Source: Guillardia theta CCMP2712 (taxonomy: Eukaryota; Protista; Cryptophyta). Taken from it: DNA of 64,000 bases. The notes beneath the pieces are model-generated. The model worked only from the letters and a program-made list of their open reading frames with translations, ran no database searches and was not told the DNA's origin. Shown in pieces: positions 8,672 to 16,432 of this stretch. Both the position numbers and the translations under genes were made by a program. Position 1 is the stretch's first letter. Every line of letters begins with the position of its first letter. Location of the stretch: contig NW_005434660.1 of assembly GCF_000315625.1 (NCBI RefSeq), positions 172,711 through 236,710 on the forward strand. Direction: 5' to 3'.

Positions 8672-10206
8672 CGTTGGAATCGAGTGACGTGGTAGATCAG
8701 ACTTTCAGCCTAGTATCAAAGGCTGTACCGAGTCCTATCGTCAGTATCCTCCTCCTCCTCCTCCTCCCTTGCCGCGCTCCTCGCGATCTTTGCTGCTCCT
8801 ACTCAAGATTATCGTTTGCAACGGCCATTGCCGCCCTGCTTTTGATTTTCGTTTCTTTCTTCAGCCGACAGTTACAGCAGTTATATCGATGCTGGGCACA
8901 TTGATAACGGTTTTTGGGGGTGGCGGTTACAATTTTCGACTGGACCCTACCCTTGCGCCCAAGTTTTCTAGGATTTGACAGGGGGGGTTGCGCCTATGAT
9001 ACATCTACCCCTGGTGATTAGACCCAAACATCCGGTGGGGTCATACTTGCAGGGAAGGGTACACTACCCTACCCCAGAGCTCTATCCTATGGCACAGCTA
9101 TATCTTTGTACCCCATCATTCCCATCAGAATTAGTTGAAAACATAGGTAGGGTGAGAAATGGAAAGTCAAACAGAGGGGGTAGGGAGAAGTTGAGAATGT
9201 ACCTTGGGGTAGGTCAAGTGATTCCAATGGGTGGGGTTATCTACCCTACCACCTAAATGTCTGCCCCATTTTCATTTCCTTCCCATGTTGTGGTCATACA
9301 AGTGTCGGAGTAGGAGGTGGGGGGCGCTATTCCACATGGGTAGGGGTGGGGCGGCCTGGGTACGTGGTCTGCGCAGGCAAATCGGGGAGGGGTGGGTTCG
9401 CGAGCGGGAATGTCGGCGGGAGTGGAGGACAACAGCGGCACGATGGTGAGAAAACATGAAGGAGAGGAGATGAATGAAAAGGAAAGAGCATGTGAGAACA
9501 ACATTGCATGACACTTATGGGGATGAGGAAGCAGAAAGCGAAAGATAATGATCAGGAAAGATACAACAATAGAAACAGGTTCACATCCAAGCACTCTCAG
9601 TAGCAAGGTTTGAGCATACAAGACTGCAGGCATGATTGCCGAACTCGACCGCGAAATATACACAGCAGTAGTGCTGAAATCTAAGGAGATTGAGAAAGGA
9701 AAATTCTGGGTAGGCTGTTGCACAGGAGGGTAGAGAGGGCCCAAGTTGAGCTTGGGCGGCAAACAAGAATGGTGATGGCCACCTTGAGAAATACATTTGG
9801 AACAAGCTATTTAGTTGGATGACAACAAAAGATGATATGAGTCTGAAGATTGGGGCGAATGGGGCCAAACATGGAATATAACTCTCGAACAGCCTGAATG
9901 AAAGCAAAGAGGATAGGAAGAGATGGTTTTTCGTTTCCTGTAGTAATCCCTGAGTCTGTAACGAGGAGGTTCCTCGTTTGATTGCAAACTTTAGATGTAG
10001 AAGGGCAACTTTTAGAAGTGATGCTTCGGAGGCGTGCCAAACATCTAATGACGTCTTTGATCTAGGAGGCGATCCTGCGGGTCGACTCGCCGGGGTCATT
10101 TGAGAAGAAATCTGGCGCACAAGATGCCAGATCAGAACGGACCAGCTCAGATCTTTCTTCTCCTCTACTTTCTAGAATTCCGCTCCTTCCCAAGCTAGAG
10201 GTTGCT

Positions 10207-13200
10207 ATGATGGCTTCCACACAGCTTGAGGAATTCCCCTCACCGTCGTCCTACTTTCTGCATGCCAAAATGCAACATGAAAGGGCTCGACAAGATCGGC
10301 TCTCTGGTATAGTCGGGATATCCACTGAACAGGTGACTTGTTTCTCAACACGTTTGTCGAATTGTTTACCATATAAGCGCAGAAATCCAGCAAGCACGAA
10401 CCTAGCTTGAAGGCGCTTGCACGTAGAAGTATATGTCTCGCTATGAGCCACACGGAGAGCTCCGGGCGTGCTCCTAAGACTATCATAGATGAGATACTCC
10501 AATCGGAGATCTTGCTGGAAGTGTTGACGTTCTTGGATGCAAGGCATATTCTTTGTGTCATGGCAGTGTGTCGCAAGATGAAGCTGATTGCGGGAAGTAG
10601 CCATTTTTGGAGCAAAATCGGTGAAATCGAGAAGGATTGCTCTCGAGTCAATTGGGCAGCATTCAAGTTTCAAGGAGTTTTGAAGAAGAAGAAAGACTCG
10701 ATGGTTGTGAAATGCGAGAGCCGTGTTTCTGGCAAAGTGATGGTTGTCAAGAGAATCAAGAAGATGCCTTCAGTATCAGGAGACGCCTCAGATGAAGATG
10801 AGGCCGGTGCCGATCAAGGCTTCCCTGTCCGTTATCTTCGAGAGGCCTGTCTTCTCAGGGCCTGCAATCACCCCAATGTGATGAAGCTTGAATTCGTGAC
10901 ATATCATGAAGGCCAGATCGAGCTCTTTTCTGAGTTTGTCGGATTGAACGTAGAAGACTACATTTCGAGTCTTTCAGACGAATACTTCACCCGAAACAAG
11001 CAGAAGCATGAATGGGTACTTCAGCTGGGCCGATATTTTATGAAACAGGTTCTGAAGGGCATTGATTACTGTCATTCCATCGGAATTTTATTACGAGACG
11101 TGAAACCTAGGAATTTTCTGATTTCTTCCGATGGAACACTGAAGCTGACAGGGTTCGTTCTGGCTCGCTTTTCTCTTCTTCCTGAGGAACCTCTTACACA
11201 ACAAGTTGTGACGCTCTCTTACAGAGCACCGGAAATCATCCTGGGTGGAACCTATCCTGTCTACACGGCACCTGTCGATATATGGTCAGCAGGTTGTACT
11301 TTTGCCGAGATGATCACCGGCCGGACACTCTTCGAAGGAGACAGCGAGATCGGGCAGCTTCTCAAGATCTTCAAGCTACTGGGCACACCTTCAGATTGCA
11401 ACAAGTCATTCTGCTTTGAAGTCCCTTCATATATTGAGCTTCTTCCTCAGTGGCAGCCTCAGAGTCTGAGTGAAAGGCTGGAGGGCTTGTGTGACGAAGG
11501 GGTTGATCTCTTATCGCGTATGCTCTTGTACCATCCTTGTAGCAGGATTACAGCAAGGGATGCTCTGAAGCACCCTTACTTTCAAGGGGATCATGTCTGC
11601 AAGCAATCGAACTGCTCCTTGAAACGTTTGATTGGCGAGGACGAGCTGACATGTATGCGAATGCCTCAAGGATGTGAGATCAGCAGAGTCTTAGCAAGAG
11701 CTGTCGTAGCGGATGCCAAAGAAAGCTGCAGACAGCAAGAAGCTTCGCATCATACTTGTTGCGAAGCACAAGTTTGCAGGTCAAATTGTTGTGATGACAG
11801 CTCCAACGAGGCCGCTATGTGTTCCTTGTCGTATCAGAATATCTATCAATCTTACGGTGTAAATATCTTTCAGTCGTTGACCAGAAATGAGGTGAGATTT
11901 ACCGTGTTTGGCAGCTGTTTTGACAACTGACCACGATGGACGACGCAGGAGAAATTTCTGCCTTGTAATCAAGAATCGCTTCGATGTACGGAGTATCAAG
12001 CAGTGCGGAAAGATCTTGTACACTTCATCATACAAGTCATTGATGAAGACATAATGAAGCCAGAGACCTTGTATTTAGCTGTAAATTACATGGACAGGTA
12101 AGCTCGATATTGCAGATTGATTTGGGCGTCATGTTATCTCCTTGTGATGGCTTTCTGTTACAGGTTTGTGACCTCCTGCCCACGGGCGCTGCACAACATG
12201 AAACTTGTTGCTGTCGCCTGCATTCTCATCGCCTCGAAGCAAGAAGAGCTTGCTCCCCAGAGCGTGTTGAATCTAATTCTCCGAACAGAGGATACCTTTG
12301 ATGAGGTTTTACCTTTCTTCATGTCATCGTCCTCATCTGACTGGATTTCGAAGGTATTAGGCATGGAAGCAGATGTCCTGCGGGATTTAGATTACTCCTT
12401 GACACTTTGTACCCCGTGGCGCTGTTCAGAATTCTACCGATTCCACATCTTGTACGACAGGGAACTGCCGGCATCTCTCAAGAGGTTTCTAAACTAGTCC
12501 TCCCCAGATTGCTTGACTGTTTGTGTAGTATGTTTTCTCGGACTCAGCCGCTGCCGAACGACATGTGGAACTTGTCAAGGTCTCCGACTGTGATGAAACT
12601 CATTCCTTATAACATGCTTGCTTCTTCAGATATCTGATGGAGCTAGCATTGAGCGAATTCCAAGAGATTTTCACCCGTCCTTCTCAGCTTGCAGCGGCTG
12701 CCGTTATCCTTTCGATGCACAACTTTGAAAGGTAAAGTCGAGGAAAGTAGAGTTCTGCTGGAAGAGAGCTTATGAATTTGACAGCGATATCGTGGATCTG
12801 TGCTTGCAATCGCACGCAGAAAATGGAAGGCATATAGAAGAAGATGCGACTCTGCCAGTCCATGTTCAAAACATCATCCTGTACAAAATCAGGTGAACTG
12901 ATGTCGTATCGGAGACAATGGAAATCCCTGACACTGTGAAGCAGCAATCTTTTGAATAGCTCCAGTCACGAAGACAGCAGTGCGTCTTCGCAGTGGTGCG
13001 TGCACGAGGCACTCAACAACCTTGTTCAGATCATGTCAAGGTTGCAAAAGTGAGTTTGTTCGTAACGATCCAAACTTTGATCCCACGCTTTCTGCATGCA
13101 CCTATTCGCTCCTGTACCCCCTCCCCCACTTTCTCCCTCTTCCTCCCTCCCTCCCTTCCTTCGTCACATAGTTGCTGACTGACTTGTATCTACTGTTGTA

Positions 13201-13349
13201 GGTATCACAAGGCTGTCTCCGAAGACAACCCCACATACCGACGATTCTCTCACACCTCCAATATCTCCCGTCGCCCGCTGCTGCGCTCCTTGCCCAACCT
13301 TCAAGTCTCGGAGGGAAGGTTGAAAATCATCATTGCAAGCAGCAACTAA
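10207..13349 (+). CDS. F-box + CDK-like (pseudo)kinase + cyclin (N and C boxes) fusion protein
   Basis: Exon 1 10207-10332, intron 10333-10382, then exon 10383-11891. This exon encodes the F-box (LQSEILLEVLTFLDARHILCVMAVCRKMKLIAGSSHFW), a CDK fold (GFPVRYLREACLL, LRDVKPRN, LTQQVVTLSYRAPE, VDIWSAGC, LFEGDSEIGQL, RITARDALKHPYF) and the cyclin N-terminal helix (YGVNIFQSLTRNE). A phase-0 intron 11892-11948 leads to the cyclin box (VRKDLVHFIIQV..ETLYLAVNYMDRF..KLVAVACILIASKQEE..MEADVLRDLDYSL) and the C box (YLMELAL..RPSQLAAAAVILS). Likely stop at 13349. Confidence 0.88.
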
Positions 13350-13531
13350 GAGCGAGGAGATGACACTATGTTGGAAGGATTAGAAAAGGTCTACAGGCCG
13401 GAGCTCAACTTGTATTCTAGCGGGAATATTTATTGATAGATGATGAAAGTCAGATACGAACGAGATGCGAAGGAAAGCGTGCGTCTGGATGCTCTCAGCT
13501 GGGACGAATGCGAGAGTATCCGCAGGAGGGA

Positions 13532-14493
13532 TCATGAGGATTGAGCCTTCTTGTCGTTGCTGCTCGTCATCGAGTTCAAGTACGCTTTGTTCATCGCACT
13601 CCGCGCTTGCTGCGGGTCAGTCTTGGCCCGAATGATCTGAGATGGAGATCACTACGATTGTTGTGACTTTCACATCACCGTACCCGGAAGCACCGTGTGA
13701 CAATATCTCCGATGTCTCTGCAGGAACATCGTCAAGACAACAAGAAAACATCAGCCAAGGAAATGAAGCAACCTCTGTACCCAAATCTGCCACCACACGG
13801 TCAGAATGCAATGCACCGGCATGCCAGTCCTCACCTCAACTTCTGAACCTGGAGGGCCGAGAAGCAGGTCAGCTACTCGAGTAGCCGGTGCCTTGTAGAC
13901 ATTGTTTCCATCGATCTTCAACAGGATCTGCGGCATGGGCGTCATGCATAGCGAAACTGAGTTGGTTCAATCCTACATCTCCCGCAATCAACCTTCCTTC
14001 TGAAGTGGCTCCAGGGCAAACCTTCACGAGCCATTACATTCAAGGGGACGAGGAGGAGGCTAAGGGAACAACCGTGTGCACGTAGAGGCACCTTTCGCTG
14101 TTCATGGCAACGATGATCCCTATCCCAACTTTCTCCTCCTTTGAGCTCTTCGACTGCAAGGTTCTGGACCTTTCCGGCTGTGTGACCCTCTGAGCAGGAT
14201 TGCCTTCATCCAGAGCTCGGCTATGACCTGGTTTGCTCTCAGGGGGCTGACCCTGTAACCATCGTCAACTCCTTGCCGCCCTCCTCCCTCTCAGATTCAA
14301 AACAAACCGACACAGGTCAAACTCTCATGATCACTCCCCAGGGTCACGCACACACACACATCGACGCAAGCATGCTCCCTATAGGAGGCAAGAGACTGGC
14401 ACAGTGCCCTCCTCCTACCTCCTTGTCTGCTGCCGCCTTGGGCTCGCAGCATCCTATCCGCTGCGGCGTGCATATACCGGCCAGCCACTCCAT
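13532..14493 (-). CDS. Small PDZ-domain protein
   Basis: Spliced: VGIGIIVAMNSERCLYV..VCPGATSEGRLIAGD..ILLKIDGNNVYKAPATRVADLLLGPPGSEVE. Likely N-terminus MEWLAGICTPQRIGCCEPK. Confidence 0.7.
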
Positions 14494-14879
14494 TCGCCCT
14501 TGCACCCCTCAGCGTCGCGCTGGGCAGCTGAAATATAGGAAGCCTGTGATTGTGAGCGCGACTTGTTTACATTTTAACAATCATTTTTAGACTTAAGTAA
14601 AACAGTGGTACGAAGAATAGCTCATCGGAGAACCAAGAGCCGTTGATCGCCAAAAATAATTGTAAATAATTATAAGTTTTATTTATTTGTAGGGAAACGT
14701 ATCGGTATTTCCCGGAAGACTTGGAGAAATGCAAAGTTTTAAAAGTAAAAATTGGTACCAAAGGATCGATGTTTTTTTTTAATTAACATTATTTTAAACT
14801 TTGGGGGTTGAAAGAGGACAGCGAATTTCCTTCTTGATTGCCAGCATGCTGTCCTGCCCTGAGTCTTGATTAAACAACC

Positions 14880-16432
14880 ATGTGCATCATGGCGGCCTTG
14901 GTTGGGATGAGCGCGGAGTTCCCGGTGAGATGATGAAGCGACGAGAGAACGAGATGAGACGAGACAAGACGAGATGAGACGAGATGAGACGAGATGAGAC
15001 GAGATGAGACGAAACGAGACGAGACAAGACGAGATGAGACGAGATGAGACGAGATGAGACGAGACGAGACGAGACGAGATGAGACGAGATGAGATGAGAC
15101 GAGACAAGTAGAGATGAGATGAGAGTCGATATACGCGAGGGGAGTCGAAGAGGGATTTGGGATCCAAAGGAGAGCAACATATCACGACAGAGAGATTGCA
15201 GTAGAAGACTAGAATAAAGGCAAAGACTCGGATATGAAATGCTCCAGTATCAATTCTTTGTTGGGAGATGACAGGACTTGCTTTGATGTATGGATTGCAG
15301 TTCATCTTGGTTCATAATCGCGACGAGGACTGGACAAGGAAGACTTTCGATGTGCAGGACAACGGAGCTGTCATAGCGGCGATCGATAGCAGGGCAGGTG
15401 CGTCTGCCGAGGCAGGTCGAGCTCATGGTTGATGACGAACAAGGAAGGTGGAACATGGATGGGGTTGCACAAGGAGACTGCTAGATTCGCTGCGCTTACG
15501 AATGTGAGAACAAAACAAAAGGTACCCACTCCGTCCAAATCACGGGGAAGAATGGTTCAAGACTACCTCGAGAGAGGGTGATGCTAGAAATGCAAATGTG
15601 TACGAAGAGAAGTTTAAGATGACTCTTGACAACGCAGAAGCGAACAATGGGAGGACTACTATGCTTATCACACGTATATGCTCATGAGATGCTGGTGAGA
15701 TACGGAGTTGACTCTGCGAGACAGGTTGCACTGCAGCGATATCAGAGCAAGGCAACATGGCGAACCAGAAGTTTACCTTCGCACTTGTGTTCCTACTGTT
15801 GGTGGGGGAGAATGCACATGGGAAACTGTGTGTGAACGACTGGACTCTGGACACGTGTACTGTATCAGCAATGAAGAATGCAGAAGTGTAAACACAGCCA
15901 ACTTCCCGAAGTGCGCCTGGCTCAAGCAAGAGCTTGAGCGAACAATCAAATCGTTCAATGTTGAAAGCAAAGGGAAAGAAGGCGCACTGAAACTTGCAGA
16001 AGCGATGAGCATAGCGATGTCCTCTACAGTGAATTTTGCTGAGGTACGGTATATTTCAATCTTATGTTAGCACCCTCAATGCAGAACTTGTCAGGAGAGT
16101 CTACCCGATATGAGTTTTAGCCCTCTCACCAAGGAGCAGGAGACTATCTTGCAAAGGGGCCCGTACATTCACGGGCCGAGTGCAGGTAAGAATGAGGTCA
16201 GGGAGAGCTGAACATCAGCCGATAGATGCCGGCAGGTTTTGAAAGCTACGGGACTCAGACACAGACGATTGTCATTAGCAGTGCGAGCAGCAAGTCAATC
16301 TATTACTTTTGCAGGAGAACAGAAGGTTGTTCCGACAGTATCTGATTTGTTGTCTTTGCTGAAGTTGGACTCGCAGGACTCGATGCTGAACAGGCTCGGC
16401 AGACGCCCTTTGCCTGTTTCGAGGTCCAGTGA
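14880..16432 (+). CDS. TANGO2: TANGO2/NRDE-family protein (Ntn-hydrolase fold)
   Basis: MCIMAALVGMSAEFP | intron 14925-15300 | FILVHNRDEDWTRK..DSRA-GGTWMGLHKETARFAALTNVR..SRGRMVQDYL..VYCISN..YGTQTQTIVI. Shows the N-terminal MC, NRDE, GGTW, LTN, SRG and YGT family motifs. Confidence 0.88.
14940..15125. repeat. (GAGAC/GAGAT)n pentanucleotide microsatellite in TANGO2 intron 1
   Basis: More than 30 degenerate pentamer copies. Confidence 0.92.

What the first reader, a model, noticed from the sequence alone, without database searches (positions are those of the whole stretch)
10207..13349. One polypeptide fusing F-box, CDK and cyclin: candidate SCF receptor that mimics a CDK-cyclin complex
Seen: the F-box, the full CDK fold and the cyclin N-terminal helix (YGVNIFQSLTRNE) sit in one uninterrupted exon, so the fusion does not depend on my splicing. 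A phase-0 intron (11892-11948) continues into cyclin N and C boxes. Established: F-boxes bind Skp1 in SCF ligases; animal cyclin F is an F-box+cyclin receptor; SCF-Skp2/Cks1 recognises p27 while p27 is bound to CDK2-cyclin. Inference: this protein hard-wires that arrangement, presenting an intramolecular CDK-cyclin surface that captures CDK inhibitors or substrates for ubiquitylation. I know of no characterised F-box-CDK-cyclin triple fusion, but I could not search.
Basis: partly seen in the sequence, partly recalled or inferred. Interest (0 to 1): 0.92.

Follow-up and report, generated by a model that had tools for sequence, protein, structure and literature searches.

The report
F-box, dead CDK, cyclin in one protein
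This Guillardia theta gene really does make one protein that joins an F-box, a CDK-like kinase that has lost key catalytic residues, and a cyclin; it belongs to a little-studied protist family whose kinase-cyclin part was noted in 2010, and it probably works as a ubiquitin-ligase adaptor.

Summary
Observation confirmed. The window is Guillardia theta CCMP2712.

- **One mRNA.** Two cDNA-derived contigs from different studies carry one spliced transcript over 10065-13636. It has nine GT..AG introns, including 11892-11948. The ORF (10207-13349) is unbroken: 856 aa, or 794 aa from the ATG at 10443.
- **Domains.** Pfam finds an F-box (10497-10616), a protein kinase (10698-11582) and Cyclin_N. A family HMM finds the second cyclin fold.
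- **Ortholog.** The Hanusia phi transcript protein aligns without gaps over 625 aa.
- **Annotation.** The public model GUITHDRAFT_157280 (303 aa) holds only the kinase.
- **Kinase state.** It looks catalytically dead: DFG reads GFV and the glycine loop is absent. The beta3 Lys, alphaC Glu, T-loop Thr and its three arginines are kept.
- **Models.** Skp1 plus F-box scored ipSAE 0.74 against a best control of 0.01. AlphaFold2 gave pTM 0.87 for F-box, kinase and cyclin N-fold together, and the kinase resembles cyclin-bound CDK2.
- **Not unique.** An exhaustive search finds the same three-domain layout in Aphanomyces, Phaeothamnion, Tribonema and many unnamed marine sequences. These form one kinase clade (98/97).
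- **Prior report.** Judelson & Ah-Fong (2010) described the kinase-cyclin part; their text never mentions an F-box.

Most likely role: an SCF substrate receptor whose recognition module is a dead CDK-cyclin pair. Its targets are unknown. This scan also noted the same stretch separately as a pseudokinase; it was not found on other DNA.

The parts
9415..9444 (+). 3' end of an upstream non-coding exon (5' UTR), spliced to 10065
   Evidence: The loose 5' letters of RNA contigs X1 and X2 map uniquely here. The exon's own start was not determined.
10065..10332 (+). Exon with the rest of the 5' UTR, a 24-codon uORF (10124-10198) and the first in-frame ATG (10207)
   Evidence: RNA contig pieces 10065-10329. 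The uORF was read by eye. The ORF was checked.
10207..13349 (+). Coding region: 10 exons, 856 aa (794 aa if translation starts at ATG 10443). Introns: 10333-10382, 11892-11948, 12098-12163, 12306-12353, 12485-12528, 12580-12629, 12732-12784, 12893-12944, 13050-13201
   Evidence: All nine joints are present in contigs of X1 and X2 and absent from X14. All are GT..AG, and the spliced ORF has no stop.
10497..10616 (+). F-box (aa 81-120)
   Evidence: PF12937 28.3 bits and PF00646 25.7 bits, both over their cut-offs. It is conserved at the same place in relatives. The Hanusia F-box docks on Skp1 helices in the model, 0.74 against 0.01 for the best control.
10698..11582 (+). CDK-like kinase domain (aa 148-442), probably a pseudokinase
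   Evidence: Pkinase 152.5 bits. The best solved relatives are CDK1 and CDK2 at E 3e-58. Motif table.
11151..11159 (+). GFV in place of the DFG motif (Gly299 where the Mg-binding Asp should be)
   Evidence: The alignment to CDK1 reads KLTGFVLAR against KLADFGLAR. All cryptophyte-type relatives have the same change.
11583..11864 (+). Cys-rich linker (aa 443-536, 11 Cys), partly helical in the model
   Evidence: It is 66% identical to Hanusia, against 90% for the kinase.
11865..12401 (+). Cyclin N-terminal fold (aa 537-658; exons 2-5)
   Evidence: Cyclin_N 88.9 bits on the Hanusia ortholog, which aligns without gaps. The best solved relative is cyclin A2 at E 2.9e-15.
12438..13253 (+). Cyclin C-terminal fold (aa 671-825; clearest part aa 692-740 = 12545-12794)
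   Evidence: An HMM built from the Cyclin_C segments of 14 family members matches aa 692-740 at 30.5 bits.
13350..13460 (+). 3' UTR; it abuts or overlaps the 3' end of a convergent gene on the minus strand
   Evidence: Stranded 3'-tag reads of X21 on the + strand peak at 13275-13425. Minus-strand reads and CT..AC joints begin beyond that. The end point is approximate.

Best explanation
The stretch is one nuclear gene of Guillardia theta. Its single mRNA encodes an N-terminal F-box, a CDK1/2-like kinase domain that has lost catalytic essentials, a Cys-rich linker, and a complete A/B-like cyclin with both folds.

Proposed mechanism:
1. The F-box binds Skp1 and so places the protein in an SCF (Skp1-Cul1-Rbx1) ubiquitin ligase.
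2. The cyclin folds back onto the PSTAIRE-like helix (PVRYLRE) of its own kinase domain. This gives a permanent CDK-cyclin-shaped module held in the active-like conformation.
3. The module cannot phosphorylate. It therefore acts as the receptor's substrate-binding domain for proteins that normally dock on CDK-cyclin: CDK inhibitors, Cks, or CDK substrates and regulators.
4. Those proteins are then ubiquitylated.

Shown here: the single transcript, the domains, the loss of the DFG Asp and glycine loop, the retention of the regulatory residues, and membership of a wider family. Supported by models only: Skp1 docking and the rigid cis arrangement. Inferred: SCF assembly, lack of catalysis, and the identity of the targets.
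For: - One spliced transcript and an unbroken ORF.
- The Hanusia phi transcript protein has the same layout and aligns without gaps over 625 aa.
- Distant relatives have kinase and cyclin in one ORF with no intron between them (L001 and L002).
- Both F-box Pfam models score over their cut-offs.
- The Skp1 and F-box model gives ipSAE 0.74 against a best control of 0.01. That mark was reached by 51 of 78 solved complexes and 2 of 108 mismatched pairs. The runs agree in at least 84% of contacts, and partner pLDDT is 61-63. The interface is Skp1 residues 99-164 with F-box residues 13-47.
- Skp1 and CKS genes are present in the genome.
- The kinase has GFV for DFG and KKKKDS for the glycine loop. 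It keeps the beta3 Lys, alphaC Glu, the Arg of HRD, the Arg after DFG, and the T-loop Thr.
- The kinase is the most conserved part between Guillardia and Hanusia: 90%, against 64% for the F-box.
- The cyclin keeps the Arg, Asp, Leu, Lys and Glu that align with the conserved cyclin-box residues of cyclin A2.
- AlphaFold2 on residues 1-625 of the Hanusia ortholog gives mean pLDDT 84.4 and pTM 0.87.
- All 50 best Foldseek matches are cyclin-bound CDK2 or CDK3, none monomeric CDK2.
- F-box-bearing relatives form one kinase clade with support 98/97.
Against: - There is no biochemical evidence of any kind.
- The Skp1 and AlphaFold results may partly reflect the models' memory of solved Skp1-F-box and CDK2-cyclin A complexes. 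They were also run on the Hanusia ortholog, not on the Guillardia protein itself.
- The fold tool returns no contacts, so cis docking rests only on pTM and on the conformation of the kinase.
- Guillardia and Hanusia have altered the cyclin hydrophobic patch (VRKDLVHF for MRAILVDW), which may weaken RxL docking.
- HRD keeps its Asp and the catalytic-loop Asn is present. From my own knowledge, CASK also has Gly in place of the DFG Asp and still works without Mg. Residual activity therefore cannot be excluded.
- No target is known.
Confidence: 0.55

Rival explanations
1. It is an atypical but active kinase. The hard-wired cyclin keeps it permanently 'on', and the F-box serves to bring it to SCF-bound proteins or to time its own destruction.
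For: The beta3 Lys, alphaC Glu, HRD Asp, catalytic-loop Asn, T-loop Thr and its arginine triad are all kept. The kinase is the most conserved domain. From my own knowledge, a kinase with Gly for the DFG Asp (CASK) is active without Mg. F-box proteins are commonly auto-ubiquitylated (established knowledge).
Against: The glycine-rich loop is entirely replaced (KKKKDS) and the DFG Asp is lost in every cryptophyte-type member. The sister group has different disabling changes: HRN, KPKH and DFA. That pattern fits a family in which catalysis is not under selection.
Confidence: 0.15
2. It is a decoy or sink rather than a ligase adaptor. The dead CDK-cyclin module titrates CDK inhibitors, Cks, CAK or Wee1-type regulators, and the F-box-Skp1 contact has a non-SCF role.
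For: The module keeps CDK and cyclin docking features but lacks catalytic ones. Non-SCF Skp1-F-box complexes are known in yeast (established knowledge).
Against: The F-box is conserved across the whole family at a fixed distance from the kinase. It is modelled in the canonical Skp1 groove. Most such F-boxes work in SCF.
Confidence: 0.15
3. It is a cyclin-F-like receptor in which only the cyclin recognises substrates through Cy/RxL motifs. The dead kinase is merely a structural brace.
For: Animal cyclin F works this way (PMC12232547, listed). Most family members keep an MRAIL-like patch, such as HRAMLVDW or MRKILVEW. ESM Atlas automatically names the nearest oomycete cluster 'Cyclin-F'.
Against: The kinase domain is more conserved than the cyclin, and it keeps the T-loop Thr and phospho-Thr-binding arginines. 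In Guillardia and Hanusia the patch itself is altered. Cyclin F is not among the 60 best solved relatives of the cyclin part; cyclin A2 is the best.
Confidence: 0.12
4. It is a gene-model artefact: two adjacent genes (F-box-kinase and cyclin) joined by mistake.
For: The public annotation has only a 303-aa kinase model. Contigs can merge neighbouring transcripts, as they do here at the 3' end with the convergent gene.
Against: The junction is a 57-nt intron removed in frame in contigs from two studies. There is no stop and no room for a promoter. The Hanusia transcript has the same fusion. L001 and L002 have both parts in one uninterrupted ORF. Dozens of relatives share the layout.
Confidence: 0.02

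Closest known systems
CDKs with integral cyclin domains (Judelson & Ah-Fong 2010, Phytophthora infestans kinome, PMC3019232)
   Same: The CDK-like kinase is followed by Cyclin_N and Cyclin_C in one polypeptide, confirmed at the RNA level, with a kinase predicted inactive. Stramenopile proteins carrying that paper's hallmark (HRN in subdomain VIb) form one clade with the Guillardia kinase, support 98/97.
   Different: The paper reports an Asp-to-Asn change in subdomain VIb. Guillardia keeps that Asp (LRD) and instead loses the DFG Asp and the glycine loop. The paper's text never mentions an F-box; here the F-box turns out to be family-wide. The P. infestans proteins themselves were not examined here. 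No function is known for either group.
Cyclin F (FBXO1), animal SCF substrate receptor
   Same: It has an F-box followed by a cyclin box, and the cyclin box acts as a substrate-recognition module that activates no free CDK.
   Different: Cyclin F has no kinase domain. Here a whole CDK fold sits between the F-box and the cyclin. The cyclin part is closest to cyclin A2 among solved structures, not to cyclin F.
SCF-Skp2/Cks1 bound to CDK2-cyclin A-p27 (e.g. PMC10318019, PMC7895821)
   Same: An F-box protein, Skp1, a CDK and an A-type cyclin sit in one assembly that presents a CDK-bound protein for ubiquitylation. The fusion reads as a natural Rosetta stone of that assembly.
   Different: Those are separate polypeptides with an active CDK2 and an LRR domain on Skp2. 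Here there is one chain, a dead kinase and no LRR. Whether Cks or an inhibitor binds was not tested.
CDK-cyclin fusions with intact catalytic motifs and no F-box (P0258, P0319, P0332, P0326, P0134)
   Same: The kinase and cyclin are in one chain.
   Different: They have intact or nearly intact glycine-loop, HRD and DFG/DWG motifs and no F-box, and they fall outside the F-box clade. ESM Atlas places kinase + Cyclin_N clusters in Nucleocytoviricota; that is a lead only.

Membership tests
F-box proteins (SCF substrate receptors) | F-box motif recognisable by profile | tested here: met
   PF12937 28.3 bits (cut-off 24.3) and PF00646 25.7 (cut-off 20.5). By eye, the motif lies in register with my recollection of the Skp2 F-box, except Pro to Gln.
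F-box proteins (SCF substrate receptors) | Binds Skp1 through the F-box | tested here: inconclusive
   Model only: ipSAE 0.74 against a best control of 0.01, with the interface on Skp1 residues 99-164. It was run with the Hanusia F-box. A pass shows likeness to solved complexes, not binding.
F-box proteins (SCF substrate receptors) | Assembles with Cul1-Rbx1 and promotes ubiquitylation of a bound substrate | not testable with these tools
   This needs biochemistry.
Cyclin-dependent kinases (CMGC/CDK) | CDK-type kinase fold with a PSTAIRE-like cyclin-binding helix | tested here: met
   CDK1 and CDK2 are the best solved relatives at E 3e-58. The helix reads PVRYLRE. Foldseek gives TM 0.85-0.91 to CDK2.
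Cyclin-dependent kinases (CMGC/CDK) | Complete catalytic apparatus (GxGxxG loop, beta3 Lys, HRD Asp, DFG Asp) | tested here: not met
   The glycine loop reads KKKKDS and DFG reads GFV. The Lys and the HRD Asp are kept. It is therefore filed as CDK-like pseudokinase, not as a CDK.
Cyclin-dependent kinases (CMGC/CDK) | T-loop Thr and the three arginines that hold its phosphate | tested here: met
   Thr314 is kept. The Arg of YLRE, of LRD and of GFVLAR are kept and are nearly invariant across 51 sequences. Their role is from established knowledge of CDK2.
Cyclins (A/B-like) | Cyclin_N fold with the conserved Arg, Asp, Leu, Lys and Glu | tested here: met
   Cyclin_N 88.9 bits on the gapless Hanusia ortholog. 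The alignment to cyclin A2 keeps all five residues.
Cyclins (A/B-like) | Second (C-terminal) cyclin fold | tested here: met
   The family Cyclin_C HMM matches aa 692-740 at 30.5 bits. Pfam could not be run on the spliced Guillardia protein. Relatives score 25-76 bits for PF02984.
Cyclins (A/B-like) | Binds and activates a separate CDK partner | not tested
   The model implies that it is occupied by its own kinase domain.
Cyclin F (FBXO1) orthologs | F-box directly followed by the cyclin box, no kinase; cyclin box closest to cyclin F | tested here: not met
   A 295-aa kinase domain lies between them. Cyclin A2, D, B and E are the solved relatives found.
CDKs with integral cyclin domains (Judelson & Ah-Fong 2010) | Kinase followed by Cyclin_N and Cyclin_C in one transcript | tested here: met
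CDKs with integral cyclin domains (Judelson & Ah-Fong 2010) | Asp-to-Asn substitution in kinase subdomain VIb | tested here: not met
   Guillardia reads LRD, whereas stramenopile members read HRN. It is therefore a separate subfamily.
CDKs with integral cyclin domains (Judelson & Ah-Fong 2010) | Common descent of the kinase domain with stramenopile proteins bearing the HRN hallmark | tested here: met
   There is one clade of 23 rows, support 98/97, apart from 22 ordinary CDKs. Attraction between long branches of two divergent groups cannot be fully excluded.

The most novel reading that the evidence does not exclude
The whole family is a previously unrecognised class of SCF substrate receptor, found in cryptophytes, stramenopiles and many unnamed marine protists. 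It uses a catalytically dead CDK-cyclin pair, possibly gated by T-loop phosphorylation, as a substrate trap. It holds proteins that dock on CDK-cyclin (inhibitors, Cks-bound phosphoproteins, RxL substrates) and sends them for ubiquitylation. It would be a single-chain natural counterpart of the Skp2-Cks1-CDK2-cyclin A assembly.
Probability: 0.4. Interest if true: 0.8.

Novelty: new variant of a known kind. Interest (0 to 1): 0.6.

Why it matters
The CDK-cyclin pair and the SCF ligase are the two engines of the eukaryotic cell cycle. Here they are welded into one chain, with catalysis removed and the docking and regulatory surfaces kept.

If the protein is an SCF receptor, ubiquitin ligases can borrow the shape of a CDK-cyclin complex to find their targets. 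That would give a direct handle on cell-cycle control in cryptophytes and stramenopiles, whose CDK inhibitors are largely unknown.

The fusion also independently supports the view that the Skp2-CDK2-cyclin A association seen in animals reflects an old functional link.

Practically, the public Guillardia gene model (303 aa, kinase only) needs replacing. The 2010 description of kinase-cyclin fusions also gains an F-box that the paper's text does not mention.

Tried and rejected
- **Two-gene artefact:** rejected.
- **Raw RNA reads of X21:** this is a 3'-tag library that covers only 12671-13727. It shows the strand and the 3' end but cannot test the 11891/11949 junction.
- **Neighbouring annotated gene models:** no record was on file for P0002.
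- **L003, a relative's contig:** no cyclin was found within the 4.5 kb held. This says nothing either way.
- **Pfam and AlphaFold on the spliced Guillardia protein:** not possible, because it has no reference. I used the gapless Hanusia ortholog P0001 and a local HMM instead.
- **Literature:** seven searches found only PMC3019232 as a description of natural kinase-cyclin fusions, and nothing on an F-box-kinase-cyclin protein. Subscription journals are not covered.
- **Taxon names:** cluster look-ups named only Aphanomyces astaci, Phaeothamnion confervicola and Tribonema minus. Most members are unnamed metagenome or Logan sequences. The reported ciliate and Theileria relatives were not examined.
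- **Paralogs:** the gene is single-copy. The nearest kinase paralogs are ordinary CDKs at 42% identity, and the nearest cyclins are about 30% identical.
- **Cyclin F orthology:** rejected.
Full report
**Identity of the window**

A protein search with exon 10443-11891 returns GUITHDRAFT_157280 of Guillardia theta CCMP2712 at 100% identity. That public model is only 303 aa and covers the kinase alone (P0002). The window is G000:C14:172711-236710.

The long ORF 10407-11927 gives three Pfam hits:
- F-box-like, 28.3 bits (cut-off 24.3).
- F-box, 25.7 bits (cut-off 20.5).
- Pkinase, 152.5 bits.

A downstream frame gives Cyclin_N.

I laid public runs on 9500-14000, 4501 letters, within the operators' limit.
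- Contigs of X1 (3087 nt, depth 347) and X2 (3506 nt), from different studies, each carry one molecule spanning 10065-13636.
- Nine GT..AG introns are removed from it.
- Contigs of X14 are colinear with the genome and show no joints.
- The spliced contigs must therefore come from cDNA, although the run records do not say RNA.

Joining the supported exons gives 2571 nt, or 856 aa, without a stop, ending at 13347-13349.

Exon 10383-11891 alone contains the F-box (10497-10616), the kinase (10698-11582) and the first residues of the Cyclin_N match (from 11865).

Stranded 3'-tag reads of X21 place the transcript on the + strand, with its end near 13425-13460. The contigs run on into a convergent minus-strand gene, which is an assembly merger at overlapping 3' ends.

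A further 5' non-coding exon ends at 9444.

The start codon is uncertain. 10207 is the first in-frame ATG. A 24-codon uORF precedes it, read by eye. The Hanusia ortholog begins at the equivalent of ATG 10443.

**Independent support for the fusion**

- The Hanusia phi transcriptome protein P0001 (670 aa) carries F-box, Pkinase and Cyclin_N.
- It aligns to the spliced Guillardia protein without a single gap over 625 residues, across three Guillardia intron positions.
- Identity by part:

| Part | Identity |
|---|---|
| Kinase | 90% |
| Cyclin N-fold | 87% |
| Linker | 66% |
| F-box | 64% |

- In two Logan contigs of a 45-49% identical relative (L001, L002), kinase and cyclin lie in one ORF with no intron between them.
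- In a JGI metagenome contig (L004), the cyclin follows the kinase on the same strand.
- The gene is single-copy in G. theta. The nearest kinase paralogs are ordinary CDKs at 42% identity, and the nearest cyclins are about 30% identical.

**The three domains**

*Kinase.*
- The best solved relatives are CDK1 and CDK2 at E 3e-58.
- The printed alignment sets KLTGFVLAR against KLADFGLAR. The Mg-binding Asp of DFG is therefore Gly299.
- The glycine loop (GEGTYG in CDKs) reads KKKKDS.
- These are kept: the beta3 Lys (VVK), the alphaC Glu (PVRYLRE for PSTAIRE), the Asp and Arg of HRD (LRD), the catalytic-loop Asn, the Arg after DFG, the T-loop Thr314 and a GDSEI motif.
- The three arginines are nearly invariant across 51 aligned sequences. 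From established knowledge of CDK2, they hold the phosphate of the activating T-loop threonine.
- I read this as a pseudokinase that preserves the active-like scaffold and its docking surfaces. Another first-stage note on this stretch (s1-445630) says the same.

*Cyclin.*
- The best solved relative is cyclin A2 at E 2.9e-15.
- The Arg, Asp, Leu, Lys and Glu that align with the conserved cyclin-box residues are all present.
- The second fold is present. A family HMM matches aa 692-740 at 30.5 bits, including the YL.EL...PS..AAA motif.
- The hydrophobic patch is altered in Guillardia and Hanusia (VRKDLVHF and LRRELVHF). It is MRAIL-like in other members.

*F-box.* By eye, and against my recollection of the Skp2 F-box, the motif lies in register except that the Pro of 'LP' is Gln.

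**Model tests**

*Skp1 docking.*
- G. theta has a Skp1 gene. P0136 is its cryptophyte protein, differing from the translated Guillardia exons at one residue.
- P0136 with residues 1-80 of the Hanusia ortholog gave ipSAE 0.74 against a best control of 0.01.
- That mark was reached by 51 of 78 solved complexes and 2 of 108 mismatched pairs.
- The runs agree in at least 84% of contacts, and partner pLDDT is 61-63.
- The interface is Skp1 residues 99-164 against F-box residues 13-47, which is the canonical one.
- Because Skp1-F-box complexes are solved, this shows likeness and not proven binding.

*Whole-protein fold.*
- AlphaFold2 on residues 1-625 of the Hanusia protein, with a 51-sequence alignment, gave mean pLDDT 84.4 and pTM 0.87.
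- I judge that a three-domain chain would not reach that pTM unless the domains were placed confidently relative to one another.
- The F-box runs straight into strand beta1, with pLDDT above 90.
- The tool gives no contacts. However, all 50 best Foldseek matches of the model are cyclin-bound CDK2 or CDK3 (TM 0.85-0.91), and none is one of the many monomeric CDK2 entries.
- The kinase is therefore modelled in the cyclin-bound state, which fits cis docking. The model's memory of CDK2-cyclin A may contribute.

**The protein is not unique**

An exhaustive HMMER search of 1.84 billion representatives with the Hanusia protein, followed by Pfam scans, shows many proteins with Pkinase + Cyclin_N (+ Cyclin_C).
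- At least nine of them have an N-terminal F-box over the Pfam cut-off. Several more lie just under it.
- Aligned, even members without a Pfam hit show the F-box pattern at the same place.
- Named members are Aphanomyces astaci (RHY20829.1), Phaeothamnion confervicola (CAM9517397.1) and Tribonema minus (KAG5183926.1).
- Baffinella has a fragment.
- ESM Atlas places the nearest cluster in Oomycota, automatically named 'Cyclin-F'. It also hints at an F-box + kinase cluster in Chlorophyta, which is a lead only.

The motifs split the fusions into three types:

| Type | Glycine loop | PSTAIRE helix | HRD region | DFG | F-box |
|---|---|---|---|---|---|
| Stramenopile | GTEGxC | PYYMLRE | HRNLKPKH | DFA | yes |
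| Cryptophyte | none | PVRYLRE | (L/M)RD | G(F/L)(V/A) | yes |
| Active-looking | intact or nearly | PSTAIRE-like, varied | HRD | DFG/DWG | no |

In a careful maximum-likelihood tree of the kinase domain, the two F-box types form one clade (23 rows, support 98/97). They stand apart from 22 ordinary CDKs and from the third type. I left out three fragments and two very long branches.

The two subfamilies are disabled at different residues. This fits a long history without selection for catalysis.

**Prior knowledge**

Judelson & Ah-Fong 2010 (PMC3019232) reported four Phytophthora infestans CDKs with C-terminal Cyclin_N and Cyclin_C.
- They confirmed them by RT-PCR.
- All four have Asp to Asn in subdomain VIb and are 'possibly inactive'.
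- Relatives were reported in other oomycetes, ciliates and Theileria.
- The word F-box does not occur in the paper's text.

That hallmark matches my stramenopile type, so I equate the two. I did not examine the P. infestans proteins themselves.

Seven literature searches found no description or characterisation of an F-box-kinase-cyclin protein. The library lacks most subscription journals.

Cyclin F as an F-box + cyclin receptor, and SCF-Skp2/Cks1 acting on p27 bound to CDK2-cyclin A, are established (PMC12232547, PMC10318019, PMC7895821, listed).

**Interpretation**

The most likely reading (0.55) is an SCF substrate receptor whose recognition domain is a permanently assembled, catalytically dead CDK-cyclin module.

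Shown: the transcript, the domains, the motif states and the family. Modelled: Skp1 docking and rigid cis packing. Inferred: ligase assembly and the targets.

The conserved T-loop Thr with its arginine triad suggests that the substrate-binding platform, and possibly its phospho-regulation, still matter. Two CKS genes exist in the genome, so Cks-assisted reading of phosphoproteins is possible but untested.

Rivals:
- An atypical active kinase tethered to SCF (0.15). From my own knowledge, CASK works with Gly for the DFG Asp.
- A non-SCF decoy (0.15).
- A cyclin-F-like receptor in which the kinase is only a brace (0.12).
- An annotation artefact (0.02).

**Verdict**

The claim of no precedent is too strong. 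This is a divergent cryptophyte subfamily of a family whose kinase-cyclin part has been known since 2010, and whose three-domain layout already sits, uncharacterised, in public protein sets.

What appears to be new:
- The F-box is family-wide.
- Skp1 docking is predicted.
- The cryptophyte type has its own distinct active-site decay.
- The Guillardia gene model is corrected.

Interest 0.6.

Noticed in passing
window 10698-11609 (public model GUITHDRAFT_157280): The public gene model is a 303-aa fragment. It starts inside the kinase (MVVKCES...), ends in a mis-spliced tail (...FQGDHSLMKT), and lacks the F-box and the whole cyclin.
   Followed up: yes
window 13415-14000, minus strand: A convergent, well-expressed gene has CT..AC (minus-strand GT..AG) introns at 13637-13683 and 13928-13976, and a poly(A) site near 13415. 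Its 3' end meets or overlaps that of the fusion gene, and unstranded RNA contigs merge the two transcripts.
   Followed up: partly
window 10124-10198: A 24-codon upstream ORF (ATG...TAG) lies in the 5' leader, ahead of the first in-frame ATG at 10207. The Hanusia ortholog starts at the equivalent of ATG 10443, so the true start is uncertain.
   Followed up: partly
proteins P0258, P0319, P0332, P0326, P0134 (not in the window): A separate set of kinase-cyclin fusions has intact or nearly intact catalytic motifs and no F-box. ESM Atlas places kinase + Cyclin_N clusters in giant viruses (Nucleocytoviricota). P0134 comes from an AT-rich 9-kb Logan contig.
   Followed up: partly
window 14739-15305, minus strand: The ORFs here are made of a short Ser/Leu-rich unit repeated many times (SSRLISSHLVSS...), which indicates a tandem DNA repeat just downstream of the neighbouring gene.
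   Followed up: no
If real, G. theta has both a cyclin-F-like protein and the kinase-containing fusion.
   Followed up: no
L005 (G000:C5:994160-997291): The G. theta Skp1 gene has at least two short introns. One lies inside the C-terminal F-box-binding domain, so six-frame matches break there.
   Followed up: partly
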